Below, piece by piece: positions 7,606 through 47,035 of a stretch of DNA of 64,000 nucleotides. Numbering within the stretch: position 1 is the stretch's first letter; the number at the start of each line of letters is the position of its first letter. Made by a program: the position numbers and the translations under genes. The stretch is taken from positions 1-64,000 of IMG/VR virus record IMGVR_UViG_3300036846_000743. One strand, written 5' to 3'. The notes under the pieces were generated by a model. It worked only from the letters and a program-made list of their open reading frames with translations. It was not told the origin of the DNA and did no database searches.

Positions 7606-9387
7606 TCAACCTTGTTTGATCTTGGGAACCGGGAATAGCAAAGTCGGGGTATCAGGCGGCAGGAATGTCCGCTTGAGCAGCACCCAACACGCCGGGTTGA
7701 ACATGAGCACCTTCACGTGCTCGCGTTCGAGTCGTTTCATGCGGAACACGGGGATATACAGGGGCGGCACCTCGATCCCTTTCTCCTCGGCCTCGAGCCG
7801 CGCGACTGTGTTCTTAACGACCTTGACGTTTTCCGCGCGGCAAAGCCGCTTCATCCATAAGGATGCCTTGCCGTAGTCTGGACAGTGATCGAGGCCGAAC
7901 GACTTATCGGTCAGCTTGGGTGCCCGCTTGAGGGCATCGGCCACGCCGTCCATCTCGACGTATTCCTTGGCCGTGGCGAACATCTGATGGCTCGGCAGGA
8001 TCAGCTGAATCGTCTGCCGGGACAGCTCCAGCTGCTCACGGTTGCTGACGGCAATGTCGGCCAGCCGGGCCACGGCCCCGGTCATGGTCGCAATCAGCTC
8101 GGCCAGCTCGCCGGGAGGAGCGCCATGGGCCTTGACGGCCTTCAGGACGATCGGTTCGAGCGTCGCCGGCAATTCCTCCAGGATGATCGCGCGGAACGCA
8201 GCACGCAGCTCCTCGTCCGTCAGGCCGGTCTTGGCACCAGGCGCTTTGTAATGGCCGTACTTGCGAATCGACGGCAAAACGTCGTGGTACACCCACCGTC
8301 TGAACCCCTCTGCATCCTTCTTGCGACTGGTCGAGATCAGTCTGTACAAGCCCGGTTCTTTGAGCGTGACGTGAGATTGGGGGCCGCCAGGGGTATCTAC
8401 TACGCGGAGCCCCTTTTCATCGGCAGGAACTCGCGACAGAGCCTGATGAGGTTGGGCGATACCGAGCGCATCGGTGACATAAAGCCCTACCCACTCAGGA
8501 TCTTCGTACGTCCCGAAGGTCGGACACGGATACTTGTCCATGAAGATATCCGGGACGCCTACCAGAGGCTGCTCGACCGGCAATTCGGGCTCGGGTGGTG
8601 GTGCTGAAGCCTCGACTGGCTTCTGGCCAGCCGCGATCGGTATGCCGTCGGCCAGCTGAAGCTCGCCGTCGGGGGCCATCATCGCCAGGCGCGGCAACAG
8701 TCGCGGCTCGGCTGGATGCCGACCCGCCCGCCACTCCGCCCGGTCCTGCGCCGTGGACAGCTGCGCGACGTGGAACGTCATCACGCGGGCTGCATCGTCG
8801 ACGGGGATGTCGAGGAGCGTAGGCTTGGCCCAGCTGGACAGCACCTTCGTGACGGCCGCCGTACCCAGGATCAGGACCGGCGTGACGTCACGCTCCAGCC
8901 TGGCGTCTCTCGCCTTGACCGCCGCCAGGAAGGTGGACTCGGGCATCCTTCTGCGCGTGGCGGTCCAGTGATCGATGGCCTCGTCCCAGGCCATGATCAG
9001 CTCGGCGTGATGCGCCGCGAAGGGGATGTATCTGGGCAGAACGTAGCGGATGAGATTGCGGCAGAACTCGATGTAGCCGCCGACGCGCATGTGGAACGCC
9101 TTCTGGATCAGTCCCTCCACAGCGAAAAGTGTTGTGCTCCGCATTCGCGTCTTGGTGTAGATCTTGTGCGGGTCCGGCACGCGCCGCACGTACTTCTCGG
9201 AGATCCCGCCGGCGATGTCGCTGGTGCTGTACTCGCCGGTAGCCCGGCGGCCGAAGCCGCTCAACCTCGCAACCTGCTGGGCCGGGGCCCAGAGAGTATG
9301 GTCCTGGCCGGGTTCGTGGAGAATGTCGACCTCCACGTCGCCATAGAACAAGATCGTCTGCGTCTCGTAGCCTTGGAGCGCTGGCAT
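7606..9387 (-). CDS. BRO-N domain protein (phage antirepressor-like)
   Basis: PEWVGLYVTDALG...EKGLRVVDTPGGPQSHVTLKEPGLYRLISTSRKKDAEGFRRWVYHDVLPSIRKYGHY is a canonical Bro-N motif; GGAGGAGG RBS. Confidence 0.85.
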   Translation of the reverse strand: MPALQGYETQTILFYGDVEVDILHEPGQDHTLWAPAQQVARLSGFGRRATGEYSTSDIAGGISEKYVRRVPDPHKIYTKTRMRSTTLFAVEGLIQKAFHMRVGGYIEFCRNLIRYVLPRYIPFAAHHAELIMAWDEAIDHWTATRRRMPESTFLAAVKARDARLERDVTPVLILGTAAVTKVLSSWAKPTLLDIPVDDAARVMTFHVAQLSTAQDRAEWRAGRHPAEPRLLPRLAMMAPDGELQLADGIPIAAGQKPVEASAPPPEPELPVEQPLVGVPDIFMDKYPCPTFGTYEDPEWVGLYVTDALGIAQPHQALSRVPADEKGLRVVDTPGGPQSHVTLKEPGLYRLISTSRKKDAEGFRRWVYHDVLPSIRKYGHYKAPGAKTGLTDEELRAAFRAIILEELPATLEPIVLKAVKAHGAPPGELAELIATMTGAVARLADIAVSNREQLELSRQTIQLILPSHQMFATAKEYVEMDGVADALKRAPKLTDKSFGLDHCPDYGKASLWMKRLCRAENVKVVKNTVARLEAEEKGIEVPPLYIPVFRMKRLEREHVKVLMFNPACWVLLKRTFLPPDTPTLLFPVPKIKQG

Positions 9388-21055: not shown

Positions 21056-23908
21056 CTAACCGCACGGCCCTGGATTGCCGCAGTTGTCGCAACGATAGCA
21101 GCGGGCCCCGTTGGGGACCATGACCGTGCCGCAGATGCGGCATGGCGGTCCCGTGAGCCGGGCCGTGGCCAGCCGTGAAGCCGTCATGGTAGCAACGCCA
21201 TTGCTTATGCTGTTGCCAGCGACGATAGTCGTCGATACAGGCTTCACATCGAAGTGATCTTCCGAGTGCCGCACGGGCACATTCTGCTCACGGTAGCCGG
21301 GGATGAACCGCATGCCCATCCATCTGAAGATGTAGTCAACGACACTCCGGGCAATAGGGATGTCCGGGTTCTTGGTGAATCCTGATGGATCGAACCGGGT
21401 GTACGTGAATTTGTCGACGTAGACACCGATGGGCACGCCGTATTGGAGGCCCATCGAGATCAGGGTGCCGATGGTGTCCATCAGCCCGCCGACGGTTGAT
21501 CCCTCCTTGGCCATCGTGATGAATAGCTCGCCAGGAGTGCCGTCGTCGTAGAGGCCGACGATCAGGTAGCCTTCGCAGTTACCGTCGATCGTAAACTTAT
21601 GGGTTACCGACCCGCGGGTATCTGGTAACCGGCGTCGGTAGGGCGCCGTCTGGATGGCCGCGGCCACCGTCGCCGCCATTGTTTCGATCTCCTGCTTCAT
21701 GACCACCGGCTGGCTCCCCTTGGAGCCATCCCGGAATATGGCCAGAGCTTTCAGGCCCAGCTTCCAGCCCAGCAGGTAGGCATCCCTGATCTGGTCGACC
21801 GTCGCGTCGGCCGGCAGGTTACAGGTCTTTGAGATCGCCCCCGAGACGAATGGCTGGGCCGCCCCCATCATCTTGACGTGGCCCGCGAACGGTATCGATC
21901 GCTCACCACTGGCCGGCACGAAAGCACAGTCGAAGACCGGCAGATCATGAGTCTTCATGTAAGGCGCGCCCTCGATCGTGCCGGTCTCCTCCATGTGGGC
22001 CAGGATCGCGGTGATGTGCTCAGGCTTGTAGCGCAGAGCTTCGAGCGCAATCGGCACCGTGTGATTGACGATCTTGAGCTGTCCGCCGCCGGCCAGGTTC
22101 TTGTACTTCACCAGGCCGATCTCGGGCTCGATGCCGGTGGTATCAGCTCCCATCATGAAAGCGATCGTGCCGGTGGGCGCGATCACCGAGATCTGACTGT
22201 TGCGATAGCCATGGGCCTGGCCGGCGCTGATGACCTCGTTCCATACCTTCCAGGCAATATCCGTCAGCTCATGATCGACCGACCCGGGATCGATCGCGAG
22301 CAGCGCACTACGATGCAGCTCCATGACCTTGAGCATCGGCTCACGGTTCTCGGCAAAGCCCTCGAACGGCCCTGCGACGCTGGCCAGCTCGGCTGAAGTC
22401 AGGTATCCCTGACCAGTCAGGATAGCTGTCAGGGCAGCGCAGGTAGCACGGCCCTCGGGGCTGTCGTAGGGCTTGCCCATGGCCATGATCAGGGCGCCCA
22501 GGTTGCAGTAGCCCAGGCCCAGCGGCCGGAAGCGATGACTGTTCTCGGCGATCTTGGGCGTCGGATAGCTGCCGTGATCGACCAGGATCTCCTGGGCCGT
22601 GATCATGATCCGGCAGGCTGCGCGGTAACGGTTCACATCGAATGAACCGTCTTCTCGCCGGAACTTCATCAAGTTGAGCGAGGCCAGATTGCAGGACGTA
22701 TCGTCCAGGAACATGAACTCACTGCACGGATTCGATGCGTTAATAGGACCGGTGTTGGGACACGTATGCCACTGCTGGATCGTGTCTTCGTACTGGAGCC
22801 CGGGGTCGCCGCAGGCCCAGGTACCCGTAGCGATCTTGTCCATGAGATCGACCGCGCTATAGACCGGCATCTCGCCGACGGGCGTGCCGGGCACGACCGG
22901 TACTGTCTGCCACTGAGCCCCATTATCAGCGGCCCGGAGGAATTCGCCGGTAGCCCGGACGCTCATGTTGCAGTTCTGGTAACGAACCGAAGCATAAGCC
23001 TCGCCATTGAAGTCGGGATCGTAGCCGGCGGCAATCAGGGCCTGGGCCTTGCGTTCTTCTTTGGCCTTGGCCTCGATGAACTCCAGGATATCTGGATGAG
23101 TGCACTTGAGTGACTGCATCTTGGCCGCGCGCCGGGTCTTGCCGCCGCTCTTGACCGTCGAGGCCACGCCGTCGTAGATCTGCATGAAGGACACTGGACC
23201 TGACGCCATGCCACCGCCTGAAACTTTCTCGCGGCTCGACCGGAGCGTCGACAGGTCGGTACCCGTGCCTGAGCCATACTTGAAGAGCATGGCCTCAGAG
23301 GTCGCCAGAGTCATGATGCCTTCCATGTCGTCGGTGACCGACTGGATGAAGCAGGCCGAGCCCTGGGGGTGCTTGTAGGCGTCCCCGGGCTGGACCTTGA
23401 CCGTGCTCTCCGTCTTCCGGTCCCAGTGCCACGACCGGCTGGTGCCCTGGATGCCGTACTGGTGATACAGCCCCACGTTGAACCAGACAGGCGAGTTGAA
23501 GGCCGCATACTGCTGGAGCAGCAGCACCACCAGTTCGTCGAAGAAGATGTCGGCGCTGGCCTGGTCGCAGAAGATCCCGTAGCTGATGCCCTGCTGGGTG
23601 ATCGTGCGCGCCACCCGGTGCACCAGCTGGCGGACGCTGCTCTCGCGCTCGGGCCGGCCATCTTCCAGCTGTCTTTGCGAATCACCGTAGAAGTACTTGG
23701 ATACCACCACGTTGGTGGAAACATCAGTGTAGCTGGCCGGAACTTCGGCATCGTCCTGCCGGAATATCTCCTGGCCCTTGTCATCGCGGATGACAGCCAT
23801 CCGTTTGGTCCAGCGAACCGACTCGAATGGATCTTGGCCCTCTTTGCTGAAGATGCGCTCGAAACCCAGCCCCGCACTGGGGGCTGCCGTGACCGCTACG
23901 GTATTCAT
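21056..23908 (-). CDS. nrdJ: Class II (adenosylcobalamin-dependent) ribonucleotide reductase with C-terminal TSCPD and zinc-ribbon domains
   Basis: FNSPVWFN, SACFI, NASNPCSEFMFLDDTSCNLASLNL, IAPTGTI, GAISKTCN, RRRLPDTRGSVTHKF, CRICG...CDNCG; AAGGA RBS before MNTV. Confidence 0.95.
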   Translation of the reverse strand: MNTVAVTAAPSAGLGFERIFSKEGQDPFESVRWTKRMAVIRDDKGQEIFRQDDAEVPASYTDVSTNVVVSKYFYGDSQRQLEDGRPERESSVRQLVHRVARTITQQGISYGIFCDQASADIFFDELVVLLLQQYAAFNSPVWFNVGLYHQYGIQGTSRSWHWDRKTESTVKVQPGDAYKHPQGSACFIQSVTDDMEGIMTLATSEAMLFKYGSGTGTDLSTLRSSREKVSGGGMASGPVSFMQIYDGVASTVKSGGKTRRAAKMQSLKCTHPDILEFIEAKAKEERKAQALIAAGYDPDFNGEAYASVRYQNCNMSVRATGEFLRAADNGAQWQTVPVVPGTPVGEMPVYSAVDLMDKIATGTWACGDPGLQYEDTIQQWHTCPNTGPINASNPCSEFMFLDDTSCNLASLNLMKFRREDGSFDVNRYRAACRIMITAQEILVDHGSYPTPKIAENSHRFRPLGLGYCNLGALIMAMGKPYDSPEGRATCAALTAILTGQGYLTSAELASVAGPFEGFAENREPMLKVMELHRSALLAIDPGSVDHELTDIAWKVWNEVISAGQAHGYRNSQISVIAPTGTIAFMMGADTTGIEPEIGLVKYKNLAGGGQLKIVNHTVPIALEALRYKPEHITAILAHMEETGTIEGAPYMKTHDLPVFDCAFVPASGERSIPFAGHVKMMGAAQPFVSGAISKTCNLPADATVDQIRDAYLLGWKLGLKALAIFRDGSKGSQPVVMKQEIETMAATVAAAIQTAPYRRRLPDTRGSVTHKFTIDGNCEGYLIVGLYDDGTPGELFITMAKEGSTVGGLMDTIGTLISMGLQYGVPIGVYVDKFTYTRFDPSGFTKNPDIPIARSVVDYIFRWMGMRFIPGYREQNVPVRHSEDHFDVKPVSTTIVAGNSISNGVATMTASRLATARLTGPPCRICGTVMVPNGARCYRCDNCGNPGPCG

Positions 23909-24222
23909 GTCTGGTTCCTTGGGATCAGCAGGGAATACGGAGTCTCCTCGGGGCCGGCCTCGCGGTGAGGCGGCTGATGAAGTGCATCGCTCAGGCGGCT
24001 CTTGCCAGTCCCGAAGGACCGTTGGCATGCGAGGGCCGCCTGATCATATCGCACCTCCGTGTAAAGCCCGGTGCTCCATCAGTGAACAACAGTCGGCGTG
24101 GCCCGCTGGGTGTCATGCCCTGCCGCCGACCGTCTACCGGGGGTTTATCCTACACGGCGCAGGCCACCTGGCCAACCCAGGCCCTGTCGCGATCTAGCAG
24201 TTATGCCGCAACTGTAGGTATA

Positions 24223-27518: not shown

Positions 27519-29459
27519 ATGTCGGTTGGGATCAAGACACCAGGCAAAGATGAACGAGTTGCGGAGCGACGTCTCAGAGAGACAGCCGCGGCACTGGCCG
27601 ATCTCAAGAAAGTCGAGCAAGACGGCCGCGCAATCAGCGACGTCGATCGGATCATCGCGATCCGGAAGCTGTGCGAAGCTGGCTCGATCCACACTCTGGA
27701 ACCGCTTCTGCCGCTCCTGTTCAACCTGAACGGCCGGCCATACAGTCTCTACGACTACTTCCCGTTCAGCCCGGTCTTCCGGACCCGGATGCCAACCAAC
27801 CTGGTCTTGATGACCGGCCGGCAGGTCTCAAAGTCCACATCGATGGCCAGCCATGGCGTGGCCCTGTCCAATTCGATCCCTCACTTCTCGACCCTGTTCG
27901 TCACGCCCCGCTACGAGCAGATTCGCCGGTTCTCGACCGAATATGTCGGCGCCTTCATCAAGCAGTCGCCGGTACGGGACCTGTGGGTCTCGACCGAGAC
28001 CACCGGCAACGTGCTCTTGCGCACGTTTAACAACGGCTCCCGGATGTTCTTCTCGTTCGCGCTGCTCGATGTCGACCGGGTCCGCGGCATCCCCGCCCAG
28101 AAGGTCGGCATCGACGAGGCCCAGGACATGGACCCCGATCACGTCCCCATCATCCGGGAGACCATGTCGGCATCCAAAGAATATGGGATCACCCAGGTTA
28201 CGGGCACGCCCAAGACGCTCGACAACCTCATGCACGGCGAGTGGATGCGGTCGAGTCAGGCTGAATGGTTCACGCCCTGCTTTCGCTGCGGCGCCTGGAA
28301 CATCGCCAGCCTCGAATATCATCTCGAAGCGATGCTGGGCCCGTTTCACGACGATATCTCCGAGGCCAACCCAGGAACGATCTGTCACAAGTGCCGGCGG
28401 CCTATCAACCCACGCTATGGCCGGTGGGTACATCGGCACCCTGATCGCCGCTGGAGCCGGTTAGGGCTGCATGTGCCCCAGCCGATCATGCCCCTGCACT
28501 ATGCGATCCCCAAGAAATGGTCCGAGCTACTCCAGAAACGGGAAGGGGCTGCGAATACGGCCCCACACGTCTTCATCAATGAGTCACTGGGCGAGTCGTC
28601 GGCCACGGGCAATCAGCTGGTCACCTTGCCTGACCTCCAGGAGGCGGCCGAGCTGGACTGGGAGAACAATCCCCTGGAACCGCACCCGGACGTGATCGCA
28701 CGGCTGTCTCGCTACCGGATGATCGTCATGGGGGTCGACTGGGGCGGTGGCGGCGAAGACGGGGTGTCCTTCACCGTCCTGGCCCTGCTCGGGTTTCGCC
28801 ATGACGGCAATATCGACGTGATCTGGGGCCGGCGGCTCCTGAACCCTCACGAGCACATCAAGGAAGCCGAAGAGATCTACAAGTACTACCAGCTGTTCAA
28901 ACCGACTTACATCGCGCATGACTACACCGGGGCCGGAATTCTCCGGGAGACCTTCCTGATCCAGGCTGGAATTCACATCGACCGGATCTTACCGATCCAG
29001 TACGTCCGGTCGGCAACGCACTCGCTCATGACATTTCACCAGGCCACGCCCCAGCACCAGCGATCACGGTATTCGCTGGACAAGACCCGCAGCCTGATCT
29101 ACGTGACCTCGGCGATCAAGCTCAAGATGATCCGGTTCTTCAAGTACGACTACAAGTCCGACGATATACCGGGATTGCTCCACGACTTCCTGGCCCTGAT
29201 CGACGAGAAACGGCCGGGAACCCACGCAGGCGACATTTACCTGATCAAGCGAGCCACCGGCTTCACCGATGACTTTGCCCAGGCAGTTAATATCGGCTGT
29301 GCCACGCTCTGGCATGCCAACGATGCCTGGCCCAACTTCGCCGCCGGCGCCAATTACCGGCTTACTCCGGATCAGGTGCGCCAGGCCGGGAATGTCGATG
29401 TTGGCTGGACTGACGACGATGTCCGTGCTGATGCCGGCGGATATTTCGCGAATCCATGA
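27519..29459 (+). CDS. terL: Terminase large subunit (GpA-like ATPase, zinc finger, RNase H-like nuclease)
   Basis: Walker A GRQVSKST, Walker B VGIDEAQD, coupling motif TGTPKT, CFRC...CHKC, nuclease MGVDWGGG and C-terminal DDFAQA. Confidence 0.85.
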   Translation: MSVGIKTPGKDERVAERRLRETAAALADLKKVEQDGRAISDVDRIIAIRKLCEAGSIHTLEPLLPLLFNLNGRPYSLYDYFPFSPVFRTRMPTNLVLMTGRQVSKSTSMASHGVALSNSIPHFSTLFVTPRYEQIRRFSTEYVGAFIKQSPVRDLWVSTETTGNVLLRTFNNGSRMFFSFALLDVDRVRGIPAQKVGIDEAQDMDPDHVPIIRETMSASKEYGITQVTGTPKTLDNLMHGEWMRSSQAEWFTPCFRCGAWNIASLEYHLEAMLGPFHDDISEANPGTICHKCRRPINPRYGRWVHRHPDRRWSRLGLHVPQPIMPLHYAIPKKWSELLQKREGAANTAPHVFINESLGESSATGNQLVTLPDLQEAAELDWENNPLEPHPDVIARLSRYRMIVMGVDWGGGGEDGVSFTVLALLGFRHDGNIDVIWGRRLLNPHEHIKEAEEIYKYYQLFKPTYIAHDYTGAGILRETFLIQAGIHIDRILPIQYVRSATHSLMTFHQATPQHQRSRYSLDKTRSLIYVTSAIKLKMIRFFKYDYKSDDIPGLLHDFLALIDEKRPGTHAGDIYLIKRATGFTDDFAQAVNIGCATLWHANDAWPNFAAGANYRLTPDQVRQAGNVDVGWTDDDVRADAGGYFANP

Positions 29460-39166: not shown

Positions 39167-39892
39167 TCAGTCCATGCCGATCTGACGCAGGGTCGTACCA
39201 TCGACGGCCTTGTCGATGTAGGTAAGCCACGCGTCGAGCGTCTGCTTGCCCTCCTCGGTCCCGCGCATGGCATTCTCGGCGATACCAGCCCGCATGAGCT
39301 TCTCGAGTCGATGCGGGTTGAGCCGGTCCTTGGTGATGCGGGCCTCCCTGGCCTGAGTGGCTTGCTGTTCGCGCAGCTCAGCGATCTCATCACGCAGGTC
39401 TTCAGCATGCGCATCGGCGAGATTGTAGGTCTTGACCAGCCGGAGATCACCCTGGAACTGGAAGCCGACTTCGTACTTCAGGGTATCCGGATTCATGACC
39501 CCCTTGGTGGGCGTGAACGTGAGCCGGAAGCCCAGATCCGCTGCCAGTTCGACCAGGGCCTGGCATCGCTTCACGAAGTCGGGATCAGGAAGCTCTGCCT
39601 TGTAGATCTCTTCCAGCTCATGGAGCTTGACCATGATCTCGGCGGCCAGTCGCTGGGCCTCGCCGACCTGACGCTCCAGCCGCTCGGTCAGCCGGCTCTC
39701 GGCGTGGACCACGCCGACGGCGACCAGATTGTCGATACCGAGATCGAGTGCGATCTTGGTATTGGGGGGCCCCGCCGAGGCGGCGAGCACGATATCCGTG
39801 CCGTTAGGTTCGGCGCGCCTGGCCTCCACGACGGGCGCGGCGTGAGCCGGGCGCTTGGCAGTGCTTCTTTTCTTTGTCGTCGACTTGGACAT
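39167..39892 (-). CDS. Hypothetical coiled-coil protein
   Basis: GGAGAGGA RBS before MSKSTTKK. Confidence 0.6.
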   Translation of the reverse strand: MSKSTTKKRSTAKRPAHAAPVVEARRAEPNGTDIVLAASAGPPNTKIALDLGIDNLVAVGVVHAESRLTERLERQVGEAQRLAAEIMVKLHELEEIYKAELPDPDFVKRCQALVELAADLGFRLTFTPTKGVMNPDTLKYEVGFQFQGDLRLVKTYNLADAHAEDLRDEIAELREQQATQAREARITKDRLNPHRLEKLMRAGIAENAMRGTEEGKQTLDAWLTYIDKAVDGTTLRQIGMD

Positions 39893-40595
39893 GACGTTTC
39901 CTCTCCGGGGTCCAACAGATCCTACAGTTTGAGCACGTGATCTTAACCTGCCGTTTGATACCCTGCTCGTACGGACAGACAAGCACTCCGTTGGCTCGCT
40001 TGAGCGGCTGATGCTCGTTGTCGCGAAAGACCAGGTGCTGGTAGCCAGGGACCCGCGCGGGGTCTTCGCCACGATCCAGCAAGTAGGCAATCCGCACTCC
40101 GGGAATGACCGGGGCGCGCGGCATCTCGTGGTCCGTCGAGAACCAGAGATACATGTTCTTCATGGTTGCCAGCTCCGCCAAGACAGGCATGATATCATCC
40201 TGTGTCCAGCTCCGCGTGTAGCAGAGAAACGTGGTACGGTGGCACTGGCGCACGATCGACACCCACTTCCAGCCGTAGGCGGCTGAGTAGAAGTCACCGG
40301 CCACATGTATGCGGGCGACGGTGATACAGCGAGACTTGATCTCGGACACGGCATCATCGACGAAGCTGCGCTCACGAGTACGCTTCAGGTTCTCGATGTG
40401 CTTGCGCCGGACGTTCTCCATCATGAAGAAGCCCGTGTCGGCGTAGCAGATCGAGGCACAGAAGCGGCTCTTGCCAGGGCATGTCCGCTTGGCCGGGATC
40501 GAGAACGGGTAGATCAGCGGTCCCAGCTTGGCGATGTGCGGCTCACCGAAGAGCCTCGGCCTCCGTCTGCATGCAGCCATCATCGTGGCAGCCAT
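39804..40595 (-). CDS. Gp88-like protein (radical-SAM-like Cys cluster)
   Basis: KLG...FSIPAKRTCPGKSRFCASICYA...RIHVAGDFYS...CYTRSW. Confidence 0.7.
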   Translation of the reverse strand: MAATMMAACRRRPRLFGEPHIAKLGPLIYPFSIPAKRTCPGKSRFCASICYADTGFFMMENVRRKHIENLKRTRERSFVDDAVSEIKSRCITVARIHVAGDFYSAAYGWKWVSIVRQCHRTTFLCYTRSWTQDDIMPVLAELATMKNMYLWFSTDHEMPRAPVIPGVRIAYLLDRGEDPARVPGYQHLVFRDNEHQPLKRANGVLVCPYEQGIKRQVKITCSNCRICWTPERKRHVQVDDKEKKHCQAPGSRRARRGGQARRT

Positions 40596-40810
40596 ATCCA
40601 GCTGCCCCCAGAAGGGAATGGCCACGGGAGAGGGCCGCAGCCTCCTCCATGTTGACGTCGGCCGTGCCAAGGTCCACGAGGATCTCCACCTCGGTGTGCT
40701 TCATCGTGACGTGATCTTCAGCTTCGGACAGCGCATCCTCGAACTCGGTCCTGCCCTCGCAGAGAATGAGCTTGCCGAAGAAGTCGCGGTACTTAACGTG
40801 AAACATCTCA
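40543..40810 (-). CDS. Hypothetical protein
   Basis: Probable start MFHVKY within the listed ORF 40543..40968; boundaries approximate. Confidence 0.35.
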
Positions 40811-41134
40811 GGTATCCACGATCCGGGAGCGCTGCTTGGGCTTGCTGATCCCCAGCCGGGGCTCTTCCACAGCAGCAGATGTAGATCGGACCGGTTGCGT
40901 ACCGGTCTCATCGACGTCAGCAGTGAGATGCACAGCCCGCTTGACATGCTTGCAGGTGCGCACACCATCTTTCTCGAAACGCCACGCCGGGCAGTCGCAT
41001 GAAGTGTCGCCGTCGGCCCACAGGATCGTGGTATAGATGGTGCGTCCGTTGCTGCTACGGGAAGTGAGGTAGTGCTTGGGCTGAATCACCTTGCCGCCAG
41101 TGATCTTTTTGCCTTCATGAAAATGGGACTTCAC
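40808..41134 (-). CDS. SWIM zinc-finger protein
   Basis: SCDCPAW...TCKHV (CxC-xn-CxH). Confidence 0.75.
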   Translation of the reverse strand: MKSHFHEGKKITGGKVIQPKHYLTSRSSNGRTIYTTILWADGDTSCDCPAWRFEKDGVRTCKHVKRAVHLTADVDETGTQPVRSTSAAVEEPRLGISKPKQRSRIVDT

Positions 41135-41155
41135 ACTGGACTCTCCTTTTGCCGC

Positions 41156-41803
41156 TCATGTATCGACAATCCGGGAGCGCCGTGAGACTGTGCGTGCTCC
41201 CGGCGCGCTGGCCGGCCTGGGTTTTGCCTGTGCGCCGGTCTCATCGAGGTTGTCGGTGAGTTCCAGAACCCGCCTGGAATGCGCGCACGAACGTGTTCCA
41301 TCGCGCTGCTTCGGGCCCCACCTGGGACAGTTGCATGAACTGGTCCCATCCTCCCACAAGGTTGCGGTATGGACAGTGAATCCATCGTCGCCGTGAAACG
41401 TGTAGCGATACCTGGCCTCGATCACCTTGCCGCCCATGAACTTTTTGCCAGATCGATAACTGGGCTCCATGTTCTCTTTCTCCCCGGACGCCGAGGCACT
41501 GTCTTCCCTGTACTGGACGACGGTCACCGGCAGTTCGACGATGGGCCGGCCTTTCTGGTCGGCGCGGTAGACACGAACGATGTAGACCTTGCCCAGTTCG
41601 ACATCGTCGAACTGGGCGTGCATAGCGTGACCATTGGGGTGATTGACTAGCGGCCTCGTGATTGCATACGCCGGGATCTTCTCGCGCGGTCTGAATGTAT
41701 TCAACACGAAGTCGAAGAATTCACCATCTGCGCGCCTCTCGATCGAATAGATCAAGGGGGTACCGGCCGCAGCCGGCTCCAGATAGCGGATCGTGATGCC
41801 CAC
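41156..41803 (-). CDS. SWIM zinc-finger protein with N-terminal extension
   Basis: SCNCPRW...SCAHS; C-terminus paralogous to 40808..41134. Confidence 0.7.
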   Translation of the reverse strand: MGITIRYLEPAAAGTPLIYSIERRADGEFFDFVLNTFRPREKIPAYAITRPLVNHPNGHAMHAQFDDVELGKVYIVRVYRADQKGRPIVELPVTVVQYREDSASASGEKENMEPSYRSGKKFMGGKVIEARYRYTFHGDDGFTVHTATLWEDGTSSCNCPRWGPKQRDGTRSCAHSRRVLELTDNLDETGAQAKPRPASAPGARTVSRRSRIVDT

Positions 41804-41823
41804 GAATGGGCTCCATCATCACC

Positions 41824-42855
41824 TCACACGTCGACCAGGCGGACCCGTTCGTTCAGGCGTCGACGGACCTGCTCCACCGCGGCGGAGTCCTTGGCGGCCT
41901 CGGCCACCGGTGCGATGGCCGCAGTCAGGTCGCCCTTGTGGGCCGAGAGCAGATCGGACCAGGTCATGGACCAGGTCTTGTTGGCCTCGGCGTCGACCAG
42001 CGCCAGGTCAATCGCTTTCTCCAGCGCCTGGGACGTAGCCAGGAGCTTGGTGTCGGTGATGGTACCCGCGAAGGCGCGGTTGAGCGCGATTGCGTCCAGG
42101 ACCGCGTTGAACGACTTCGGCTGGAGGATCTTGCCTTCCTGGAGCTGATGGATCAGAGCATCCAGTGCTTCGGCCAGGACCTTGCGGGGACCGGCCACCA
42201 GCTCGTCCATGGCCGCTTCGTAGTCATCGCGCTTGTTTGCCCTGACCTCGGCGAGTAGCTCCTTGTCGAGCCTGATAAACTCCTTGTACTCCTCGCTGGG
42301 AGCTTCGAGCCGCCGGATGTTGCGCACGCTGTAGCGAAACCGTTCGCCGACATTATCGACAGCTGGGATCAGCTTGCCGATGACCACGCCGTAGTCATCG
42401 CCCAGTGTCGGGCCCCACTCTGCCTGGTTATAGTCGATGACCTCGGCCTGGTAGCGGCCGACGAATTCCTCGACGCATTCGGCCAGAAAGGCCCTGGCCT
42501 GCTTCAGCTCGGCGAAGAACTGGTTCCTGGACGGCCCGGCAACAGCGCGGGCGCCGGAGAAGTTGATGGTAAACCGGTCAAGCACGTGATCCACCCGCGA
42601 GTAGCCGGGTGTCAGGACGCCATTCAACGTCTTGGGGATCAGACAGGCGATCGACTTCTTGACCAGTTTGTCCTTGACTTCCTGACCCTTGACCTCGACC
42701 TTGGCCTTGGCCTTGGGATCAAGGACGTGCTCGCCAGACCAGCGGTGCTTGACGATGTCCACCAGGTAGATATCTGCTTCCAGCTTGACGTCCTCGACGG
42801 CAACGCCATCGGTCAAGGCCGTATCATTCTGGGGTTCCATGGTCGCCGTGCTCAT
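41824..42855 (-). CDS. DUF3150-like protein
   Basis: WSG...LIPK...VDHVLDRFTINFSGARAV...FFAEL...FVGRY...RFRY pattern recalled for DUF3150. Confidence 0.55.
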   Translation of the reverse strand: MSTATMEPQNDTALTDGVAVEDVKLEADIYLVDIVKHRWSGEHVLDPKAKAKVEVKGQEVKDKLVKKSIACLIPKTLNGVLTPGYSRVDHVLDRFTINFSGARAVAGPSRNQFFAELKQARAFLAECVEEFVGRYQAEVIDYNQAEWGPTLGDDYGVVIGKLIPAVDNVGERFRYSVRNIRRLEAPSEEYKEFIRLDKELLAEVRANKRDDYEAAMDELVAGPRKVLAEALDALIHQLQEGKILQPKSFNAVLDAIALNRAFAGTITDTKLLATSQALEKAIDLALVDAEANKTWSMTWSDLLSAHKGDLTAAIAPVAEAAKDSAAVEQVRRRLNERVRLVDV

Positions 42856-43196
42856 GTTGAATCTCGCGGTGAAAGATCGTCCGGCCTGCCGGCCGGCGCC
42901 GCGGCGTAGTCAATATCACGGCACTGCTCACACAGCAGCGCCGGCATGTGTTCGATGAGCCAGGTATGCTCACGCGCGAGGGCTTCATCCCTCGTGTCAA
43001 ACGGCCCGAGAACAACGGGCGAACCGAGCGGAGACATATCGGCTAACCAGCCGCCCCGCTCATTGTCGTACTCGACATGACTGGCCCGATTGATGACGGG
43101 GCGACCAAGGCCCGCCGCCAGGCGGATTGCTTCGTCGCTGTGGATGTAGCGCACAACCCCGTCCGGACCGATATCAAAGACCACTTCTTGCGCCAT
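42852..43196 (-). CDS. Conserved small protein of the planctomycete AAA/DUF2997 gene neighbourhood
   Basis: DGVVRYIHSD...INRASHVE...WLADMSP...LGPFDTRDEALAREHTWL. Confidence 0.6.
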   Translation of the reverse strand: MAQEVVFDIGPDGVVRYIHSDEAIRLAAGLGRPVINRASHVEYDNERGGWLADMSPLGSPVVLGPFDTRDEALAREHTWLIEHMPALLCEQCRDIDYAAAPAGRPDDLSPRDST

Positions 43197-43202
43197 GGTC
43201 TT

Positions 43203-43397
43203 TCACCCCTGCGACTGCTGAACGTGCGTAGCAGCCTTGACGTCCATCTCCTTGGTAGGCGTGTCGGACGCCGGGGTGCCGAAGAGCTTCTCGTAGGGGG
43301 CCGTGGCGGCCTTGCATGCAGGGCCCTTGTAGCCCTTGGCCTCGATCATGACAGCCCCGGTGTCTTTATCGATCGTGAAGATGATCTCTTTGGCCAT
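43203..43397 (-). CDS. DUF2997 family protein
   Basis: IIFTIDKDTGAVMIEAKGYKGPACKAATAPYEKLFG. Confidence 0.75.
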   Translation of the reverse strand: MAKEIIFTIDKDTGAVMIEAKGYKGPACKAATAPYEKLFGTPASDTPTKEMDVKAATHVQQSQG

Positions 43398-43398
43398 G

Positions 43399-45108
43399 TC
43401 AGTCTCCGGTGTTGACCTGTCGTGCTCGCTTCAAGGCCGCAACTGCGGGGGCCTTTTGGATGTAGACCGGCCGGGCCGACGTCTTGCAGTATTCGCGGAC
43501 CTGCTCGATGTCGTTGCGGTGTGTCTTGAACACGATATTCTGCGCCCGGTTGACGATCGTCTCGTCGATCTCCTCGAAGATCGGGATCGTCGTGCTGCGG
43601 CGGTAGGCTGCCAGCGCCCGGGACTGGGTAACCACGTCCTCCAGCTCGGAGCCTATGAAGTTATCGGTTCCGAGGATCAGGGTGTCCCAGTCTGCCGGTG
43701 TGAGCTTCACGCCGTTCTTGCCGGTGAGCTTGTCGATGTCAACGCCGCGCCGCTTGAAGTGACTGGCGATGATCTCCTTGCGGACATCGGAAGTCGGCAG
43801 GTCGGTCGCGAAGACGGCGTCGAACCGGCGAAAGAACTCCGGCTGGATGCCCTGGATCGTATTCAGGGTGCCGATGATGTAGCCCTTGTCGAGCGGGTTC
43901 TGGACCCGCTCCGACAGCCATGCCAGGATCTGGCCGACGGCCCGGAGCGATACCCCGGAGTCACCGTTGTAGCCGCCCGTCGCGAGCATCTTCTCCAGCT
44001 CGTCGATCACGAGCAGGTAGTGCCCCTGGGCCGACAGGGTCTCGGTGACCCAGCGCACATTGCTCTCGGTCTGGCCCACGATGCCGCCGAACAGGGCGGG
44101 CACGTTCAGGAGATAGACCGGGAACCGCTTGCCAGTCTGGTTGTAGAAGATCCGGGCTGCCAGCTTGCCCATCATGCTCTTGCCGGTGCCGGCCACGCCC
44201 ATCAGGAGCATGCCCTTGGGCCTATCAAGGCCCTTATCTTCTTGCTTGTAGCACTGGGCTTGCATGCCCAGGAACTCATGCACCTCGTCGAACCCGCGGA
44301 TATCGCCGTCCTGGGGCAGCCTGTTGAAGGGGATGTAGGTGAGGAAGCCCTGCTGCGAGATCAGCTCGGCCTTCTTCTGCTCGACCGTGTCAAGCACCTC
44401 CAGATCGAAGCCCTTGTGCGCATTGGCGGCCTCAGCCACGGCGTTCTCGAACTGGATCCAGGTCAGGCCGACGCCGATGGCGGCGAGGGCCTGGCGGATC
44501 TCATCGGTGCACTTCTTGCCGTCGGTGCCGGTCTCGACGCTGATCACGGTATCGACGTGCTCCTGCTCGGTAGGACGGGGATACTCGAGCGGCACGACGT
44601 ACTCATGCAGCTCGCGGTGGATCGGCTGCGGAGACACGAAGATGATCTGCCGCCGGTGCCCGGGGACCCCGTTCTTCTTGTCCTCGGCCTTGCAGAGGAC
44701 CAGGTCGTTGATCATCGTCTTGACGATCCGCCGGCAGGCCGGGCCGTCGGTCGGGTCCTCGAAGACGTCGTGGGGATCCAGGAAGACGAACACGCCCCGC
44801 TTCAGCCGTAGCGACTCCAGGGTGGAGATCATCTCCATGGCCGCGAGCATGTTGGTATAGTCGCTCCCCTTCTTGCTGGGAAAAGGGAACTCCTTGGAAA
44901 GGCCGGTCCGGTCGTCGATGCGGTTCCAGGTAAAACCGCGGACACGATCCCAGACGATGAATGCGCAATCGGGGTCAATCTCGTGCATGATCGCTTCGAT
45001 GTCCCGGAGGAACCGGCCATCCTCAGCAGTCCGCACGGATACGGTACCCTGGCTCGAACCCCAGAGGTTCTGAACCTTTCGCTTGACGTTCGGGTTGGTC
45101 ATCGGCAT
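43399..45108 (-). CDS. Ycf46-like AAA+ ATPase
   Basis: Degenerate N-terminal AAA-like domain; C-terminal Walker A GVAGTGKS, Walker B LLVIDELEK, TLN...PEFFRRFD...DLP. Confidence 0.85.
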   Translation of the reverse strand: MPMTNPNVKRKVQNLWGSSQGTVSVRTAEDGRFLRDIEAIMHEIDPDCAFIVWDRVRGFTWNRIDDRTGLSKEFPFPSKKGSDYTNMLAAMEMISTLESLRLKRGVFVFLDPHDVFEDPTDGPACRRIVKTMINDLVLCKAEDKKNGVPGHRRQIIFVSPQPIHRELHEYVVPLEYPRPTEQEHVDTVISVETGTDGKKCTDEIRQALAAIGVGLTWIQFENAVAEAANAHKGFDLEVLDTVEQKKAELISQQGFLTYIPFNRLPQDGDIRGFDEVHEFLGMQAQCYKQEDKGLDRPKGMLLMGVAGTGKSMMGKLAARIFYNQTGKRFPVYLLNVPALFGGIVGQTESNVRWVTETLSAQGHYLLVIDELEKMLATGGYNGDSGVSLRAVGQILAWLSERVQNPLDKGYIIGTLNTIQGIQPEFFRRFDAVFATDLPTSDVRKEIIASHFKRRGVDIDKLTGKNGVKLTPADWDTLILGTDNFIGSELEDVVTQSRALAAYRRSTTIPIFEEIDETIVNRAQNIVFKTHRNDIEQVREYCKTSARPVYIQKAPAVAALKRARQVNTGD

Positions 45109-45568: not shown

Positions 45569-46327
45569 TCACTCCTTGCCCAGAGCCTGGGCGAGTCTGC
45601 TTGCCAGCGCCCTGACGTCACCGTGCGCCAGGTGGAGCGCTTCAAGCTGTCCGATCAGCATTCGCAGGTTCGATCTGACGTGGTCATTGATCTCCTTGAC
45701 CTTGGCGGCCTCCGTCTGGGTGATGGCCGCGTGGGTCGCAGGATCGTCGAACTGCGAGTGGACCCGGGCAGCCTGGTTATGCCCACCGTTCCGGATCGCG
45801 ATCCGGAGCACGTCGGGCGGGTCGAGTATACCTTCCTGGTCCAGTGCCGCGCCGATATAGGCACGGACCTCCCTGGAAAACGGCTCCTCATCATCGTCGT
45901 CGGGGGGCGCCAGGAGCATCGCCTCGGTGATCCCCCAGGCGCATTCCGCTGCGTCGGCCGGGTCCCAGGTGGCCGGATCATAGAGCCCACCAGACAGGAC
46001 GTTGCAGATCTCGATGAAGCTGGGCGTGCTCTTGAAGAAGGCGTCCGAGGTGATGACGTGGATGCCAGCCATGAGCCGGTCGAAGTTGGCCCGAGGCAGC
46101 TCGACGCCGAAGTCATCCTGGATCTCGAGCAGGATCGTGCCCGGATGCCAGGCGTAACAGTTTTCGCCAGCCGCGTCCTTGGCGTCGTAGTATTCGTCAT
46201 GGAACAAGGTCACCAGCGTTGTCGCGAAAGACTTGGGATCCGTCCAGGTCACTGCTTGTTGCTGATGTCTCGCCGTGTGGGGCTTGAGCAGCGGCATCCT
46301 TTCGCTCCCAGAGAGACACCCGCTCAC
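45569..46327 (-). CDS. Hypothetical protein
   Basis: 252 aa acidic ORF; start probably at MPLLKP. Confidence 0.65.
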   Translation of the reverse strand: MSGCLSGSERMPLLKPHTARHQQQAVTWTDPKSFATTLVTLFHDEYYDAKDAAGENCYAWHPGTILLEIQDDFGVELPRANFDRLMAGIHVITSDAFFKSTPSFIEICNVLSGGLYDPATWDPADAAECAWGITEAMLLAPPDDDDEEPFSREVRAYIGAALDQEGILDPPDVLRIAIRNGGHNQAARVHSQFDDPATHAAITQTEAAKVKEINDHVRSNLRMLIGQLEALHLAHGDVRALASRLAQALGKE

Positions 46328-46757
46328 CGCGGGTTATTGCTGTCAGTCGTTCGAGCAGCTCGTAGAGATTGTACGCGATGTATTCCGCCACGCAGGATAG
46401 CGCTTTGTCCCGGGAAATATCCTCACCCGTATTCATGTCCACCATGGCTTCGCCGGCCGAACTATGCCAGCCGACATAGCGGCGATCGACCACATGGAAC
46501 GTCATTCCGTGCGTTTCGTCGTCAGCTTCGAGCCAGCCCCAGAGTCGGGCCATGACCATCAACACTGATGGCTGATCGAAGCCGTGGCTCTTGAGAGTGC
46601 CGGCTGCCAGAATGAGAACGCCTTCCGTCGTGGCGATGATCTCGTTCATGGCCGGTACCGGTCGCTTGACAACAAGCTGGAAGAGTGCCTGTAGCTCAGT
46701 CTGGGTGAGTCCGGCCGCTTTGCCGGTACCGATGATTGGTGGCTGCTGTTCCGTCAC
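46197..46757 (-). CDS. Hypothetical protein
   Basis: AGGAGG RBS; 186 aa. Confidence 0.6.
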   Translation of the reverse strand: MTEQQPPIIGTGKAAGLTQTELQALFQLVVKRPVPAMNEIIATTEGVLILAAGTLKSHGFDQPSVLMVMARLWGWLEADDETHGMTFHVVDRRYVGWHSSAGEAMVDMNTGEDISRDKALSCVAEYIAYNLYELLERLTAITRGERVSLWERKDAAAQAPHGETSATSSDLDGSQVFRDNAGDLVP

Positions 46758-47035
46758 ATGCCCTCCTGGAACGTGAAGTCCTGCCGGAAACGAGAACCGT
46801 CGGGCAGGGGCTGCAAGGCCGCAAGCGGAGTGCCATCCGGATCCACCGGATAATGCCCGCTCTGGCTCGAGAAGCCGGGCTTGCTGATGAACTGGCGCGC
46901 CATACTCAGCGCGGTGTTCCTGGCTTCCAGTGAATTCACGTCGAGCGGCGTGGCCCCTTCGACGGTCACAGTGGCCTTCGGCCCGTTGACGCTAACCTTG
47001 CCGCCTTCTGGCTGATCAACGATCGTAACGCCCAT
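46754..47035 (-). CDS. Hypothetical protein
   Basis: AGGGAG RBS; 93 aa. Confidence 0.6.
   Translation of the reverse strand: MGVTIVDQPEGGKVSVNGPKATVTVEGATPLDVNSLEARNTALSMARQFISKPGFSSQSGHYPVDPDGTPLAALQPLPDGSRFRQDFTFQEGM

What the first reader, a model, noticed from the sequence alone, without database searches (positions are those of the whole stretch)
39804..45108. Co-oriented module: Ycf46-like AAA, DUF2997, small conserved protein, DUF3150, SWIM x2, Gp88
Seen: tightly tiled minus-strand genes. Known (from recall): Ycf46-type AAA with DUF2997 and usually DUF1257 forms an uncharacterised neighbourhood in cyanobacteria and planctomycetes, and AAA plus SWIM recurs in protein-remodelling systems. 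No DUF1257-like ORF is visible here, while DUF3150, two SWIM fingers and a radical-SAM-like Gp88 are attached. Inference: an undescribed phage ATP-driven remodelling, anti-defence or metal-cofactor system.
Basis: partly seen in the sequence, partly recalled or inferred. Interest (0 to 1): 0.6.

Follow-up and report, generated by a model that had tools for sequence, protein, structure and literature searches.

The report
Phage AAA+ cassette with shared tails
This jumbo-phage region holds a viral copy of a widespread but unstudied five-gene AAA+ ATPase cassette also found in Planctomycetota, Nitrospirota and cyanobacteria, and its proteins, two SWIM-finger proteins and even the phage portal end in the same short C-terminal peptide, which looks like a shared docking tag.

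Summary
The tiled minus-strand genes are real. The window is the first 64 kb of a 226-kb phage genome.

The core is not phage-specific. In 26 of 40 well-flanked bacterial loci all four partners lie next to the AAA. Phage loci show the same set in shuffled orders.

This window lacks DUF1257, but the genome has one at about 196 kb.

The two SWIM-like proteins are lineage-specific add-ons that do seem linked. GP88 and the upstream 252-aa and 93-aa genes are probably only neighbours. GP88 has no radical-SAM motif.

New observation: the AAA, DUF3150 and both SWIM proteins end in R-x-R-h-V-D/N-T/V. Only 10 ORFs in the genome do, one of them the portal. Across phages this tail co-varies between the AAA, its partner and, where tailed, the portal. 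AAA relatives with no cassette partners nearby lack it.

Best reading: an unfoldase-type machine whose partners and clients dock through a shared C-terminal tag. The receptor and the biological role are not known.

The parts
43399..45108 (-). Ycf46/SpoVK/Vps4-type AAA+ ATPase, 569 aa. It has an N-terminal family-specific domain of about 270 aa, one AAA module and a C-terminal tail ending RARQVNTGD.
   Evidence: Pfam AAA 5.8e-15 and phrog_8638 3.5e-60 over the full length. Walker A, Walker B and the arginine residues are invariant in A1. The nearest solved proteins are Cdc48/VAT/p97. Sources name relatives 'SpoVK/Ycf46/Vps4 family'.
43203..43397 (-). DUF2997 protein, 64 aa. Its start overlaps the AAA stop codon.
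   Evidence: PF11211 34.7 bits, over the cut-off. A profile built here finds it next to AAA relatives in 18 viral and 51 cellular loci.
42852..43196 (-). Unnamed conserved family ('p114'). The conserved core is about 80 aa, with the motif RASHVEP..G.W.ADLSPV.GP.LGPF..RS.AL.AE..WL. It is the fourth partner of the cassette, not DUF1257.
   Evidence: No Pfam, PHROG, NCBIfam or PADLOC hit. Found in 16 viral and 40 cellular AAA loci. The profile finds 4307 cluster representatives at E<=1e-3. The AF2 model has pLDDT 79.8 and no fold match.
41824..42855 (-). DUF3150-family protein, 343 aa. It has a small beta-sheet, a long helical hairpin and a helical bundle, and its C-terminal tail is RVRLVDV.
   Evidence: Pfam 21.7 bits, below the cut-off. 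Profile-linked relatives pass Pfam. hhalign to the planctomycete gene next to the AAA gives 99.8%. The AF2 model has pLDDT 79.5 and pTM 0.73; only generic helical-bundle matches were found.
41156..41803 (-). SWIM-like zinc-finger protein, 215 aa. It has an N-terminal beta-rich domain, a C-terminal CxCxnCxH finger and the tail RSRIVDT.
   Evidence: Paralogue of the next gene (E 1.6e-25). The signature is visible in alignment A5. The family sits in or beside the cassette in L005, L016, L031 and L037.
40808..41134 (-). SWIM-like zinc-finger protein, 108 aa, with the tail RSRIVDT.
   Evidence: PF04434 16.8 bits, below the cut-off of 19.6. The CxCxnCxH signature is kept.
43402..43428 (-). Codons of the AAA C-terminal tail (RARQVNTGD).
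   Evidence: AAA relatives without cassette partners have no such extension.
41827..41847 (-). Codons of the DUF3150 C-terminal tail (RVRLVDV).
41159..41179 (-). Codons of the tail of the 215-aa SWIM protein (RSRIVDT).
40811..40831 (-). Codons of the tail of the 108-aa SWIM protein (RSRIVDT).
39804..40583 (-). GP88-family protein. It is a neighbour and probably not a functional member of the cassette.
   Evidence: PF17338 118.5 bits. The conserved cysteines are Cx6Cx3C and C..Cx2Cx2C. It lies near the cassette only in L005, L031, L037 and L039. In isolated phages it occurs in genomes that lack this AAA. It has no shared tail.

Best explanation
Window 40808-45108 is the phage copy of a conserved multi-protein AAA+ system.

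Shown:
1. A Ycf46/Cdc48-like AAA+ ATPase is co-inherited with DUF2997, a DUF3150-family helical protein, an unnamed 80-aa family and normally DUF1257. This holds in bacteria and in several phage lineages, with the gene order shuffled but the set retained.
2. In this genome DUF1257 has moved about 150 kb away in the record (about 73 kb if the genome is circular).
3. The AAA, DUF3150 and the two SWIM-like proteins end in one peptide, R-x-R-h-V-D/N-T/V. The conservation is at the protein level, the peptide is nearly unique in the genome, and it co-varies between these proteins from phage to phage.

Inferred:
- The ATPase is a hexameric substrate-threading or remodelling motor.
- The tail is a docking tag read by one co-evolving receptor. 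Most likely this is one of the small beta-rich cassette proteins (DUF1257, DUF2997 or the 80-aa protein) or the N-domain of the AAA.
- DUF3150, which is replaced by other families with a similar tail in other phages, and the SWIM proteins would be tail-docked co-factors or clients.
- In this phage lineage the tag has spread to six more proteins, including the portal. That would place them under the same machine, for example for assembly or remodelling.

The receptor, the substrates and the pay-off for the phage are not established.
For: Cassette:
- 54 viral and 80 cellular loci with AAA relatives were fetched.
- Of 40 cellular loci with at least 3 kb of flank, 26 carry DUF1257 + DUF2997 + DUF3150 + the 80-aa protein.
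- Of 32 viral loci, 16 carry DUF1257 + DUF2997 + the 80-aa protein and 9 carry DUF3150.
- The order differs between lineages (Planctomycetota DUF1257-DUF2997-AAA-DUF3150-p114; Nitrospirota AAA-DUF1257-DUF2997-DUF3150-p114; window AAA-DUF2997-p114-DUF3150; L006 and L016 differ again).
- Loci whose AAA matches only in the ATPase core (L040-L059) have none of the partners.
- AAA clades in the tree match the neighbourhood types.
- The AAA occurs in 8 of 9 near-complete genomes of the related ~200-kb phages. It is a target of an intein and of an HNH insertion.

Motor:
- The Walker motifs and arginine residues are intact.
- The nearest solved relatives are the unfoldases Cdc48/VAT/p97.

Tail:
- The strict motif hits 10 of 1981 ORFs in the genome, against about 0.1 expected by my rough estimate. 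All ten are on the minus strand.
- Synonymous codons differ between copies, so the conservation is in the protein.
- AAA tail against partner tail, own locus versus permuted loci: 11 of 10000 for 32 viral pairs, 9 of 10000 for DUF3150, 57 of 10000 for X212.
- DUF3150 and SWIM tails match each other within each phage: window, L005, L016 and L031.
- In five lineages with a tailed portal, the portal tail resembles that genome's AAA or DUF3150 tail.
- AAA relatives with no partner in the locus end without the basic tail: 0 of 14, against 37 of 60.
- In plasmid pALVIN02 the DUF3150 protein, a small neighbour and a lambda-type exonuclease all end in SF[YF]F.
Against: - No physical interaction was shown. 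The one complex prediction (DUF3150 with the 80-aa protein) gave no verdict.
- The predicted folds of DUF3150 and the 80-aa protein match nothing informative, so function rests on context.
- Tail covariation is not significant within the Corndog-type set or within the cellular set, where tails are uniform. The portal test rests on five lineages (3 of 120 permutations). The motif was defined after it was seen.
- Two phages with the cassette have untailed portals (G002 and G003). The portal link is therefore lineage-specific.
- The loci are related, which inflates the counts.
Confidence: 0.55

Rival explanations
1. The shared tail is a capsid-targeting (cargo-loading) peptide, like those of encapsulin cargo or the HK97 maturation protease. 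Under this reading the AAA, DUF3150, the SWIM proteins and the other tailed proteins are packed into the prohead together with the portal and injected with the DNA.
For: - The portal carries the tail, and the tail is conserved in close relatives while the neighbouring low-complexity stretch drifts.
- Three small tailed proteins lie 6-10 kb from the portal.
- The tag is C-terminal and specific to each genome.
- The analogy to known C-terminal capsid-targeting signals is from general knowledge.
Against: - Chromosomal cassettes in Planctomycetota also share an Arg-rich tail between the AAA and DUF3150.
- Tail sharing between the AAA and its partner is also seen in small siphoviruses.
- Cassette-bearing phages G002 and G003, and six others, have untailed portals.
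- The AAA tail tracks the presence of cassette partners rather than the portal tail: AAA relatives without partners lack it, and cassette genomes with untailed portals still keep a basic tail shared by the AAA and DUF3150.
Confidence: 0.15
2. The cassette works with DNA replication or recombination. The tail would be a hub-binding motif, of the sliding-clamp or SSB-binding kind, shared by replisome-associated proteins.
For: - In RHph_I4- and RcTiptonus-type phages the cassette directly precedes an HTH protein, DnaB and PolA.
- In this genome DUF1257 lies among the exonuclease, MazG and ThyA genes.
- In plasmids DUF3150 lies beside RecT and an exonuclease, and shares its tail with the exonuclease.
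- SWIM fingers often bind DNA (general knowledge).
Against: - Classical-clade AAA modules act on proteins, not as clamp loaders or helicase loaders (general knowledge).
- The portal carries the tail.
- No tailed protein could be identified as a replisome part.
- The tail varies strongly between phages, unlike known clamp motifs.
Confidence: 0.12
3. It is an anti-defence or defence module, related to the IetAS type of ATPase system.
For: PADLOC IetA 4e-12 and NCBIfam IteA 6e-8, both over the ATPase core only.
Against: - No IetS-like protease and no PADLOC hit for any partner.
- The gene set is a core feature of a whole phage family and of bacterial chromosomes.
- The match covers only the generic AAA module.
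Confidence: 0.08
4. One reading: the AAA to GP88 is one ATP-driven metal-cofactor or radical-SAM system.
For: GP88 has seven conserved cysteines and lies downstream in four related phages.
Against: - There is no CxxxCxxC motif and no radical-SAM or PDB hit.
- GP88 relatives in isolated phages sit in genomes without this AAA, and the reverse also holds.
- It has no shared tail.
- There is a gap of about 140-220 bp before it.
Confidence: 0.05

Closest known systems
Cyanobacterial and plastid Ycf46 (AAA+) with Ycf35 (DUF1257) and DUF2997
   Same: - The same AAA family over its full length. Nostoc and Crocosphaera proteins align from the N-domain to the C-terminus.
- DUF1257 and DUF2997 are the same families. 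A DUF2997-ycf35-fed7 cluster is reported in cyanobacteria (PMC4284462).
   Different: - In this window the cassette is viral, carries DUF3150 and the 80-aa protein, and has SWIM additions.
- In Nostoc the partners lie 2-3 kb away, and no DUF3150 or 80-aa gene was found in the locus.
- The function of Ycf46 is itself unknown. It is stress-induced and KaiC-interacting according to PMC13683863.
Cdc48/VAT/Mpa-type unfoldases that dock on a partner through C-terminal tails (HbYX), and Vps4 reading C-terminal MIM tails of ESCRT-III
   Same: - A classical-clade AAA module with best PDB matches to Cdc48/VAT.
- A short C-terminal peptide shared by the ATPase and by other proteins that use the same partner. 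The comparison itself is from general knowledge.
   Different: - No proteasome, MIT domain or ESCRT-III homologue was detected.
- There is a single AAA module with an unrelated N-domain.
- The tail sequence is different and its receptor is unknown.
- This is an analogy, not membership.
Plasmid/ICE trio of a small AAA ATPase, DUF3150 and a VWA protein
   Same: A DUF3150-family protein lies next to an AAA+ ATPase. The DUF3150 C-terminal tail is shared with neighbouring proteins.
   Different: - The ATPase there is about 320 aa and of another type.
- A VWA protein is present there, but none is found in this phage genome.
- DUF2997 and DUF1257 are not annotated there. The 80-aa family has no database name, and those loci were not scanned for it.
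Mycobacteriophage Corndog gp96-gp95-gp93 (cluster O) and Rhizobium phage RHph_I4 gp084-088
   Same: Homologous AAA over the full length (26-27% identity). RHph_I4 has AAA, a 212-aa protein, DUF1257, DUF2997 and the 80-aa family. AAA and partner tails match in these lineages.
   Different: The second-position protein belongs to another family (X212 or Cd95 instead of DUF3150). No relation was detected by hhalign. Corndog-type loci have no detectable DUF1257, DUF2997 or 80-aa protein.

Membership tests
Classical-clade AAA+ (SpoVK/Ycf46/Vps4, COG0464-like) | One AAA module with Walker A GxxGxGK[ST], Walker B hhhhDE, a sensor residue and arginine finger(s) | tested here: met
   PF00004 56 bits. 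G304, G307, G309, K310, D369, E370, N416, R427 and R428 are invariant in A1. Best PDB hits are Cdc48/VAT.
Ycf46-type subfamily | Homology extends through the N-terminal domain to cyanobacterial Ycf46-like proteins | tested here: met
   The A1 profile covers positions 12-527 of the Nostoc protein and 62-525 of the Crocosphaera protein. Sources name relatives 'SpoVK/Ycf46/Vps4 family'. No curated Ycf46-specific model was available.
DUF2997 (PF11211) | Score over Pfam's gathering cut-off | tested here: met
   34.7 bits against 24.1.
DUF1257 / Ycf35 (PF06868) | A member encoded in the module | tested here: not met
   None in the window. AAA and DUF2997 abut directly.
DUF1257 / Ycf35 (PF06868) | A member encoded elsewhere in the genome | tested here: inconclusive
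   G000 196221-196685(-). Pfam gives 20.3-21.1 bits against a cut-off of 22.2. A profile of cassette DUF1257 proteins gives E 9e-33. The invariant N-terminal M-S-H is present after a TTG start with a GGAGG site upstream.
DUF3150 (PF11348) | Score over Pfam's gathering cut-off | tested here: not met
   21.7 bits against 24.9.
DUF3150 (PF11348) | Profile-level homology to proteins that pass the cut-off | tested here: met
   An iterated profile joins it to L007 (75 bits), L016 (44) and L006 (41). hhalign to the planctomycete set gives 99.8%.
SWIM zinc finger (PF04434) | Score over Pfam's gathering cut-off | tested here: not met
   16.8 bits against 19.6 for the 108-aa protein. No hit for the 215-aa protein.
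SWIM zinc finger (PF04434) | CxCxnCxH metal-binding signature | tested here: met
   Present in both window proteins and in 6 of 7 aligned relatives.
GP88 (PF17338) | Score over Pfam's gathering cut-off | tested here: met
   118.5 bits. The nearest Atlas clusters are all GP88.
Radical SAM enzymes | CxxxCxxC cluster motif, or a match to a radical-SAM model or structure | tested here: not met
   The conserved cysteines are Cx6Cx3C and C..Cx2Cx2C. There is no radical-SAM Pfam hit and no PDB profile hit. The fold was not predicted.
IetAS defence system | An IetA ATPase together with an IetS protease | tested here: not met
   Only the AAA core matches IetA (4e-12). No partner matches any PADLOC model.
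Plasmid AAA-DUF3150-VWA trio | A VWA-domain partner | tested here: not met
   No VWA or VWA_2 match in the whole phage genome at E<=0.1.

The most novel reading that the evidence does not exclude
The Ycf46-type cassette is a tag-addressed protein-remodelling system. A short, fast-evolving C-terminal peptide would act as an address that recruits any protein carrying it to the AAA+ motor, through DUF1257, DUF2997 or the 80-aa protein. Large phages would have spread this address to structural proteins such as the portal, placing virion assembly (or delivery of proteins into the capsid) under its control. If true, it would also give the first mechanistic handle on the plastid and cyanobacterial genes ycf46 and ycf35.
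Probability: 0.3. Interest if true: 0.85.

Novelty: new variant of a known kind. Interest (0 to 1): 0.66.

Why it matters
ycf46 and ycf35 are conserved genes of cyanobacteria and algal plastids whose molecular function is still unknown. Full-text searches found no mechanistic work on DUF2997, DUF1257 or DUF3150.

This analysis contributes three things:
- It defines the full gene set: five families, one of them large and unnamed with about 4300 cluster representatives.
- It shows that the set is shared by bacteria and by several phage lineages.
- It points to a concrete, testable feature, a co-varying C-terminal tag shared by the ATPase, its partners and, in some phages, the portal.

That turns 'unknown neighbourhood' into peptide-binding and tail-deletion experiments. 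These can be run in cultured systems such as Corndog, RHph_I4, RcTiptonus, Synechocystis and Planctopirus or Gimesia.

Tried and rejected
- **Complex prediction**, DUF3150 with the 80-aa protein: no verdict (score 0.00). This is not evidence either way.
- **Fold searches.** The DUF3150 model gave nothing in Foldseek PDB and only generic helical bundles in the VIA wide search. The 80-aa protein model matched nothing.
- **PDB profile searches** of the 80-aa family, DUF3150, GP88 and DUF1257: nothing significant.
- **Is the 114-aa protein a divergent DUF1257?** Rejected. Both families occur side by side in many loci.
- **Are X212, Cd95 and DUF3150 one family?** No support from hhalign; Cd95 reached 18% at best.
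- **A DUF3150 + 80-aa fusion protein (P0110) as a Rosetta stone.** Rejected. Its contig has fragmented gene calls around it and looks frameshifted.
- **The 252-aa and 93-aa upstream genes as cassette members or as the tail receptor.** Rejected for p252. It is a core gene of all ten near-complete related genomes, lies about 16 kb from the AAA where portals are untailed, and sits beside the portal in G002. For p93 this was not tested.
- **The tail as a DNA-level signal.** Rejected, because synonymous codons differ between copies.
- **Promoter and terminator scan.** Nothing above chance inside the module.
- **Blastn of the region against isolated phages.** No match.
- **Annotation of the other tailed proteins.** No Pfam or PHROG hit except the portal, which was found by tblastn.
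- **Records behind L182 and L183** are not held, so they could not be searched.

Full report
**Setting**

The window is the first 64 kb of a 226,073-bp IMG/VR virus record. It has about 60% G+C. It encodes a gpA-type large terminase, a class II ribonucleotide reductase and a Bro-N protein. Most of its proteins have no family match.

**Check of the observation**

The minus strand from 45108 down to 39804 carries seven tiled ORFs. The overlaps suggest translational coupling: AAA/DUF2997 overlap by start and stop, and the 114-aa gene overlaps DUF3150 by 4 bp.

- AAA, DUF2997 and GP88 pass Pfam's cut-offs.
- DUF3150 (21.7 against 24.9 bits) and SWIM (16.8 against 19.6 bits) do not.
- The 114-aa and 215-aa proteins match nothing.
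- No promoter or terminator signal above chance interrupts the run.

**What the core is**

Tblastn against isolated phages found the AAA, at 26-32% identity, in Rhizobium, Rhodobacter, Pseudomonas and cluster O mycobacteriophages. In Rhizobium phage RHph_I4 the annotated neighbours are a 212-aa protein, DUF1257, DUF2997 and a hypothetical protein.

I fetched 54 IMG/VR loci and 80 loci from bacterial genomes that encode AAA relatives. I then built iterated profiles for every neighbour family. Four results follow.

1. **The 114-aa protein is not a divergent DUF1257.** It is a separate family with a conserved core of about 80 aa (alignment A2). It occurs beside DUF1257 and DUF2997 in 16 viral and 40 cellular loci. 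A profile search of 1.84 billion representatives gave 4307 hits at E<=1e-3. No Pfam family covers it, and its nearest Atlas clusters are unnamed and come from Planctomycetota and viruses.

2. **The protein of about 330 aa next to the AAA in Planctomycetota is the same family as the window's DUF3150-like protein.** Hhalign gives 99.8%. Intermediate members pass Pfam DUF3150.

3. **The partner set is retained.** Of 40 cellular loci with at least 3 kb of flank, 26 carry all four partners. The gene order differs between Planctomycetota, Nitrospirota and the phage lineages, but the set persists.

4. **The control behaves as expected.** Loci whose AAA matches only in the ATPase core (L040-L059) carry none of these families.

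The AAA tree resolves well-supported clades that coincide with the neighbourhood types. The window groups with L005, L006 and L031 and is not nested inside the bacterial clade.

In other phage lineages a different family occupies the second position. RHph_I4-type phages have a 212-aa family ("X212") there. Corndog-type phages have a 266-aa family plus a 113-aa family ("Cd95" and "Cd93"). No homology to DUF3150 was detected.

**DUF1257**

The window and its close relative L005 have no DUF1257 between the AAA and DUF2997. The genome does encode one, at 196221-196685(-). The cassette-derived profile gives E 9e-33, while Pfam falls just under its cut-off.

Its true start is a TTG five bases after a GGAGGTG site. 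That start gives the N-terminal M-S-H that is nearly invariant in the family. The gene lies among exonuclease, MazG and thymidylate-synthase-like genes.

**The motor**

The Walker A and B motifs, the sensor and the arginine residues are intact. The nearest solved proteins are Cdc48, VAT and p97.

Related ~200-kb phages nearly all carry the gene: 13 of 18 records and 8 of 9 near-complete ones. One homologue holds a LAGLIDADG intein. Another is split at Walker B by an HNH-endonuclease ORF. Such insertions typically target conserved, important phage genes (general knowledge).

**Accessory genes**

- **SWIM-like proteins.** They keep the CxCxnCxH signature. They occur only in the window-like lineage, but in L016 one sits inside the cassette, between DUF1257 and DUF2997.
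- **GP88.** It lies downstream in four related phages. In isolated phages it is found in cluster A mycobacteriophages and Streptomyces phages, which do not appear among the AAA-bearing records. Its conserved cysteines are not a radical-SAM motif.
- **The 252-aa upstream gene.** It is a core gene of the whole phage family and often lies far from the AAA. Its adjacency here is not evidence of linkage.

**A shared C-terminal tail**

The AAA, DUF3150 and both SWIM proteins end in R-x-R-h-V-D/N-T/V.

- Among 1981 six-frame ORFs of the genome, a strict pattern for this tail hits ten, all on the minus strand. They are the four above, the portal at 171952-173946 (identified by tblastn to the annotated portal of Salmonella phage Arash, 2e-54), and five unannotated proteins.
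- From residue frequencies I estimate about 0.1 chance hits.
- Synonymous codons differ between the copies, so the constraint is on the peptide.

Elsewhere, the AAA tail resembles the tail of its own second-position partner more than the tails of partners from other loci:

| Set | Permutations reaching the observed score |
|---|---|
| 32 viral pairs | 11 of 10000 |
| DUF3150 pairs | 9 of 10000 |
| X212 pairs | 57 of 10000 |
| Corndog-type set (uniform tails) | not significant |
| Planctomycete set (uniform tails) | not significant |

DUF3150 and SWIM tails match each other within each phage.

About a third of 120 portal homologues carry a tail of this kind; the rest end in a Gln/Gly/Pro-rich stretch. 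In five lineages with tailed portals, the portal tail resembles that genome's AAA or DUF3150 tail. The permutation test gives 3 of 120.

AAA relatives with no cassette partner nearby (Methylomirabilota and others) stop right after the last conserved helix and lack the basic tail: 0 of 14, against 37 of 60.

In plasmid pALVIN02, DUF3150 sits between a small AAA ATPase and a VWA protein. There the DUF3150 protein, a small neighbour and a lambda-type exonuclease all end in SF[YF]F.

**Interpretation**

The shown facts fit an unfoldase-type AAA+ machine with obligate small partners, plus a short C-terminal tag that several proteins use to reach one co-evolving receptor.

The receptor is probably encoded by the cassette, because the tail on the AAA tracks the presence of the partners. 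The small beta-rich proteins and the AAA N-domain are the candidates.

The N-terminal hairpins of DUF2997 and the 80-aa protein resemble each other (hhalign 74% over 17 residues). This is a weak hint only.

Two well-known systems offer analogies, not memberships. The first is C-terminal tails of proteasomal ATPases and alternative activators docking on the same ring. The second is Vps4 reading the C-terminal motifs of many ESCRT-III proteins.

In this phage lineage the tag has spread to the portal and five other proteins. That suggests a role in assembly, or the alternative that the tag directs proteins into the prohead.

**Limits**

- No interaction is shown. The only complex prediction returned no verdict.
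- The predicted folds of DUF3150 and the 80-aa protein (pLDDT about 80) match nothing informative.
- The tail motif was defined after it was seen.
- The loci are related to one another.
- The portal test is small.
- Two cassette-bearing phages have untailed portals.
- Expression could not be examined.

Noticed in passing
G000 (own genome, outside the window): 163603-164256, 164268-164759, 165423-165767, 171952-173946, 194316-194819, 208948-209700, all minus strand: Six further proteins end in the same R-x-R-h-h-D-T/V tail as the module proteins. The 664-aa one is the portal. The other five have no family match. The 167-aa one lies two genes from the DUF1257 gene.
   Followed up: partly
L037:8732-9618: The AAA gene of a related phage is split exactly at Walker B by an insert of about 900 bp that encodes an HNH endonuclease. 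Another homologue (P0185, 883 aa) carries a LAGLIDADG intein.
   Followed up: partly
L004:1459-1920 (G000 196221-196685, minus strand); alignment A6: DUF1257/Ycf35 proteins have a nearly invariant N-terminal Met-Ser-His, plus a conserved Asp and Tyr. An N-terminal Ser-His hints at an N-terminal catalytic or metal-binding role.
   Followed up: no
L060 (plasmid pALVIN02) 5506-8933: The lambda-type exonuclease, a 107-aa protein and the DUF3150 protein all end in SF[YF]F. This is a second, different shared C-terminal tail that involves a DUF3150 protein.
   Followed up: no
L002 and 15 other loci (Corndog gp93 family): The 113-aa protein that follows the AAA partner in Corndog-type phages has a conserved C-terminal HSHDGGxTW motif, which resembles a BNR/Asp-box.
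   Followed up: no
L145:3475 (G003 portal gene): The genome search reported one in-frame TAG inside the portal match in the L031 genome. The open frame ends at ...GGGMM, and the downstream frame does not look like a tail. The cause is not resolved.
   Followed up: partly
L181:7935-12872: Beside a planctomycete-type cassette, in a frameshift-ridden long-read contig, lies a bacterial ubiquitin-like set on the other strand: ThiF E1, a JAB peptidase, an FHA protein, Prok-RING and an E2. It is probably unrelated.
   Followed up: no
window 45569-46327 and 46754-47035, minus strand: A 252-aa and a 93-aa protein upstream of the AAA are conserved in the window-like phages. The 252-aa protein is a core gene of all ten near-complete related genomes and sits next to the portal in G002, so it may be a morphogenesis gene.
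   Followed up: partly
window 21056-24028 (-), 27519-29459 (+), 7606-9387 (-): A class II (B12-dependent) ribonucleotide reductase with a TSCPD domain, a gpA-type large terminase and a Bro-N-domain protein. These are the only confidently named genes found in the rest of the window.
   Followed up: no
window 39167-39892 (-): A coiled-coil-rich ORF whose 5' part overlaps the 3' end of GP88 in another frame. The same arrangement occurs in L005. Its true start is uncertain.
   Followed up: no
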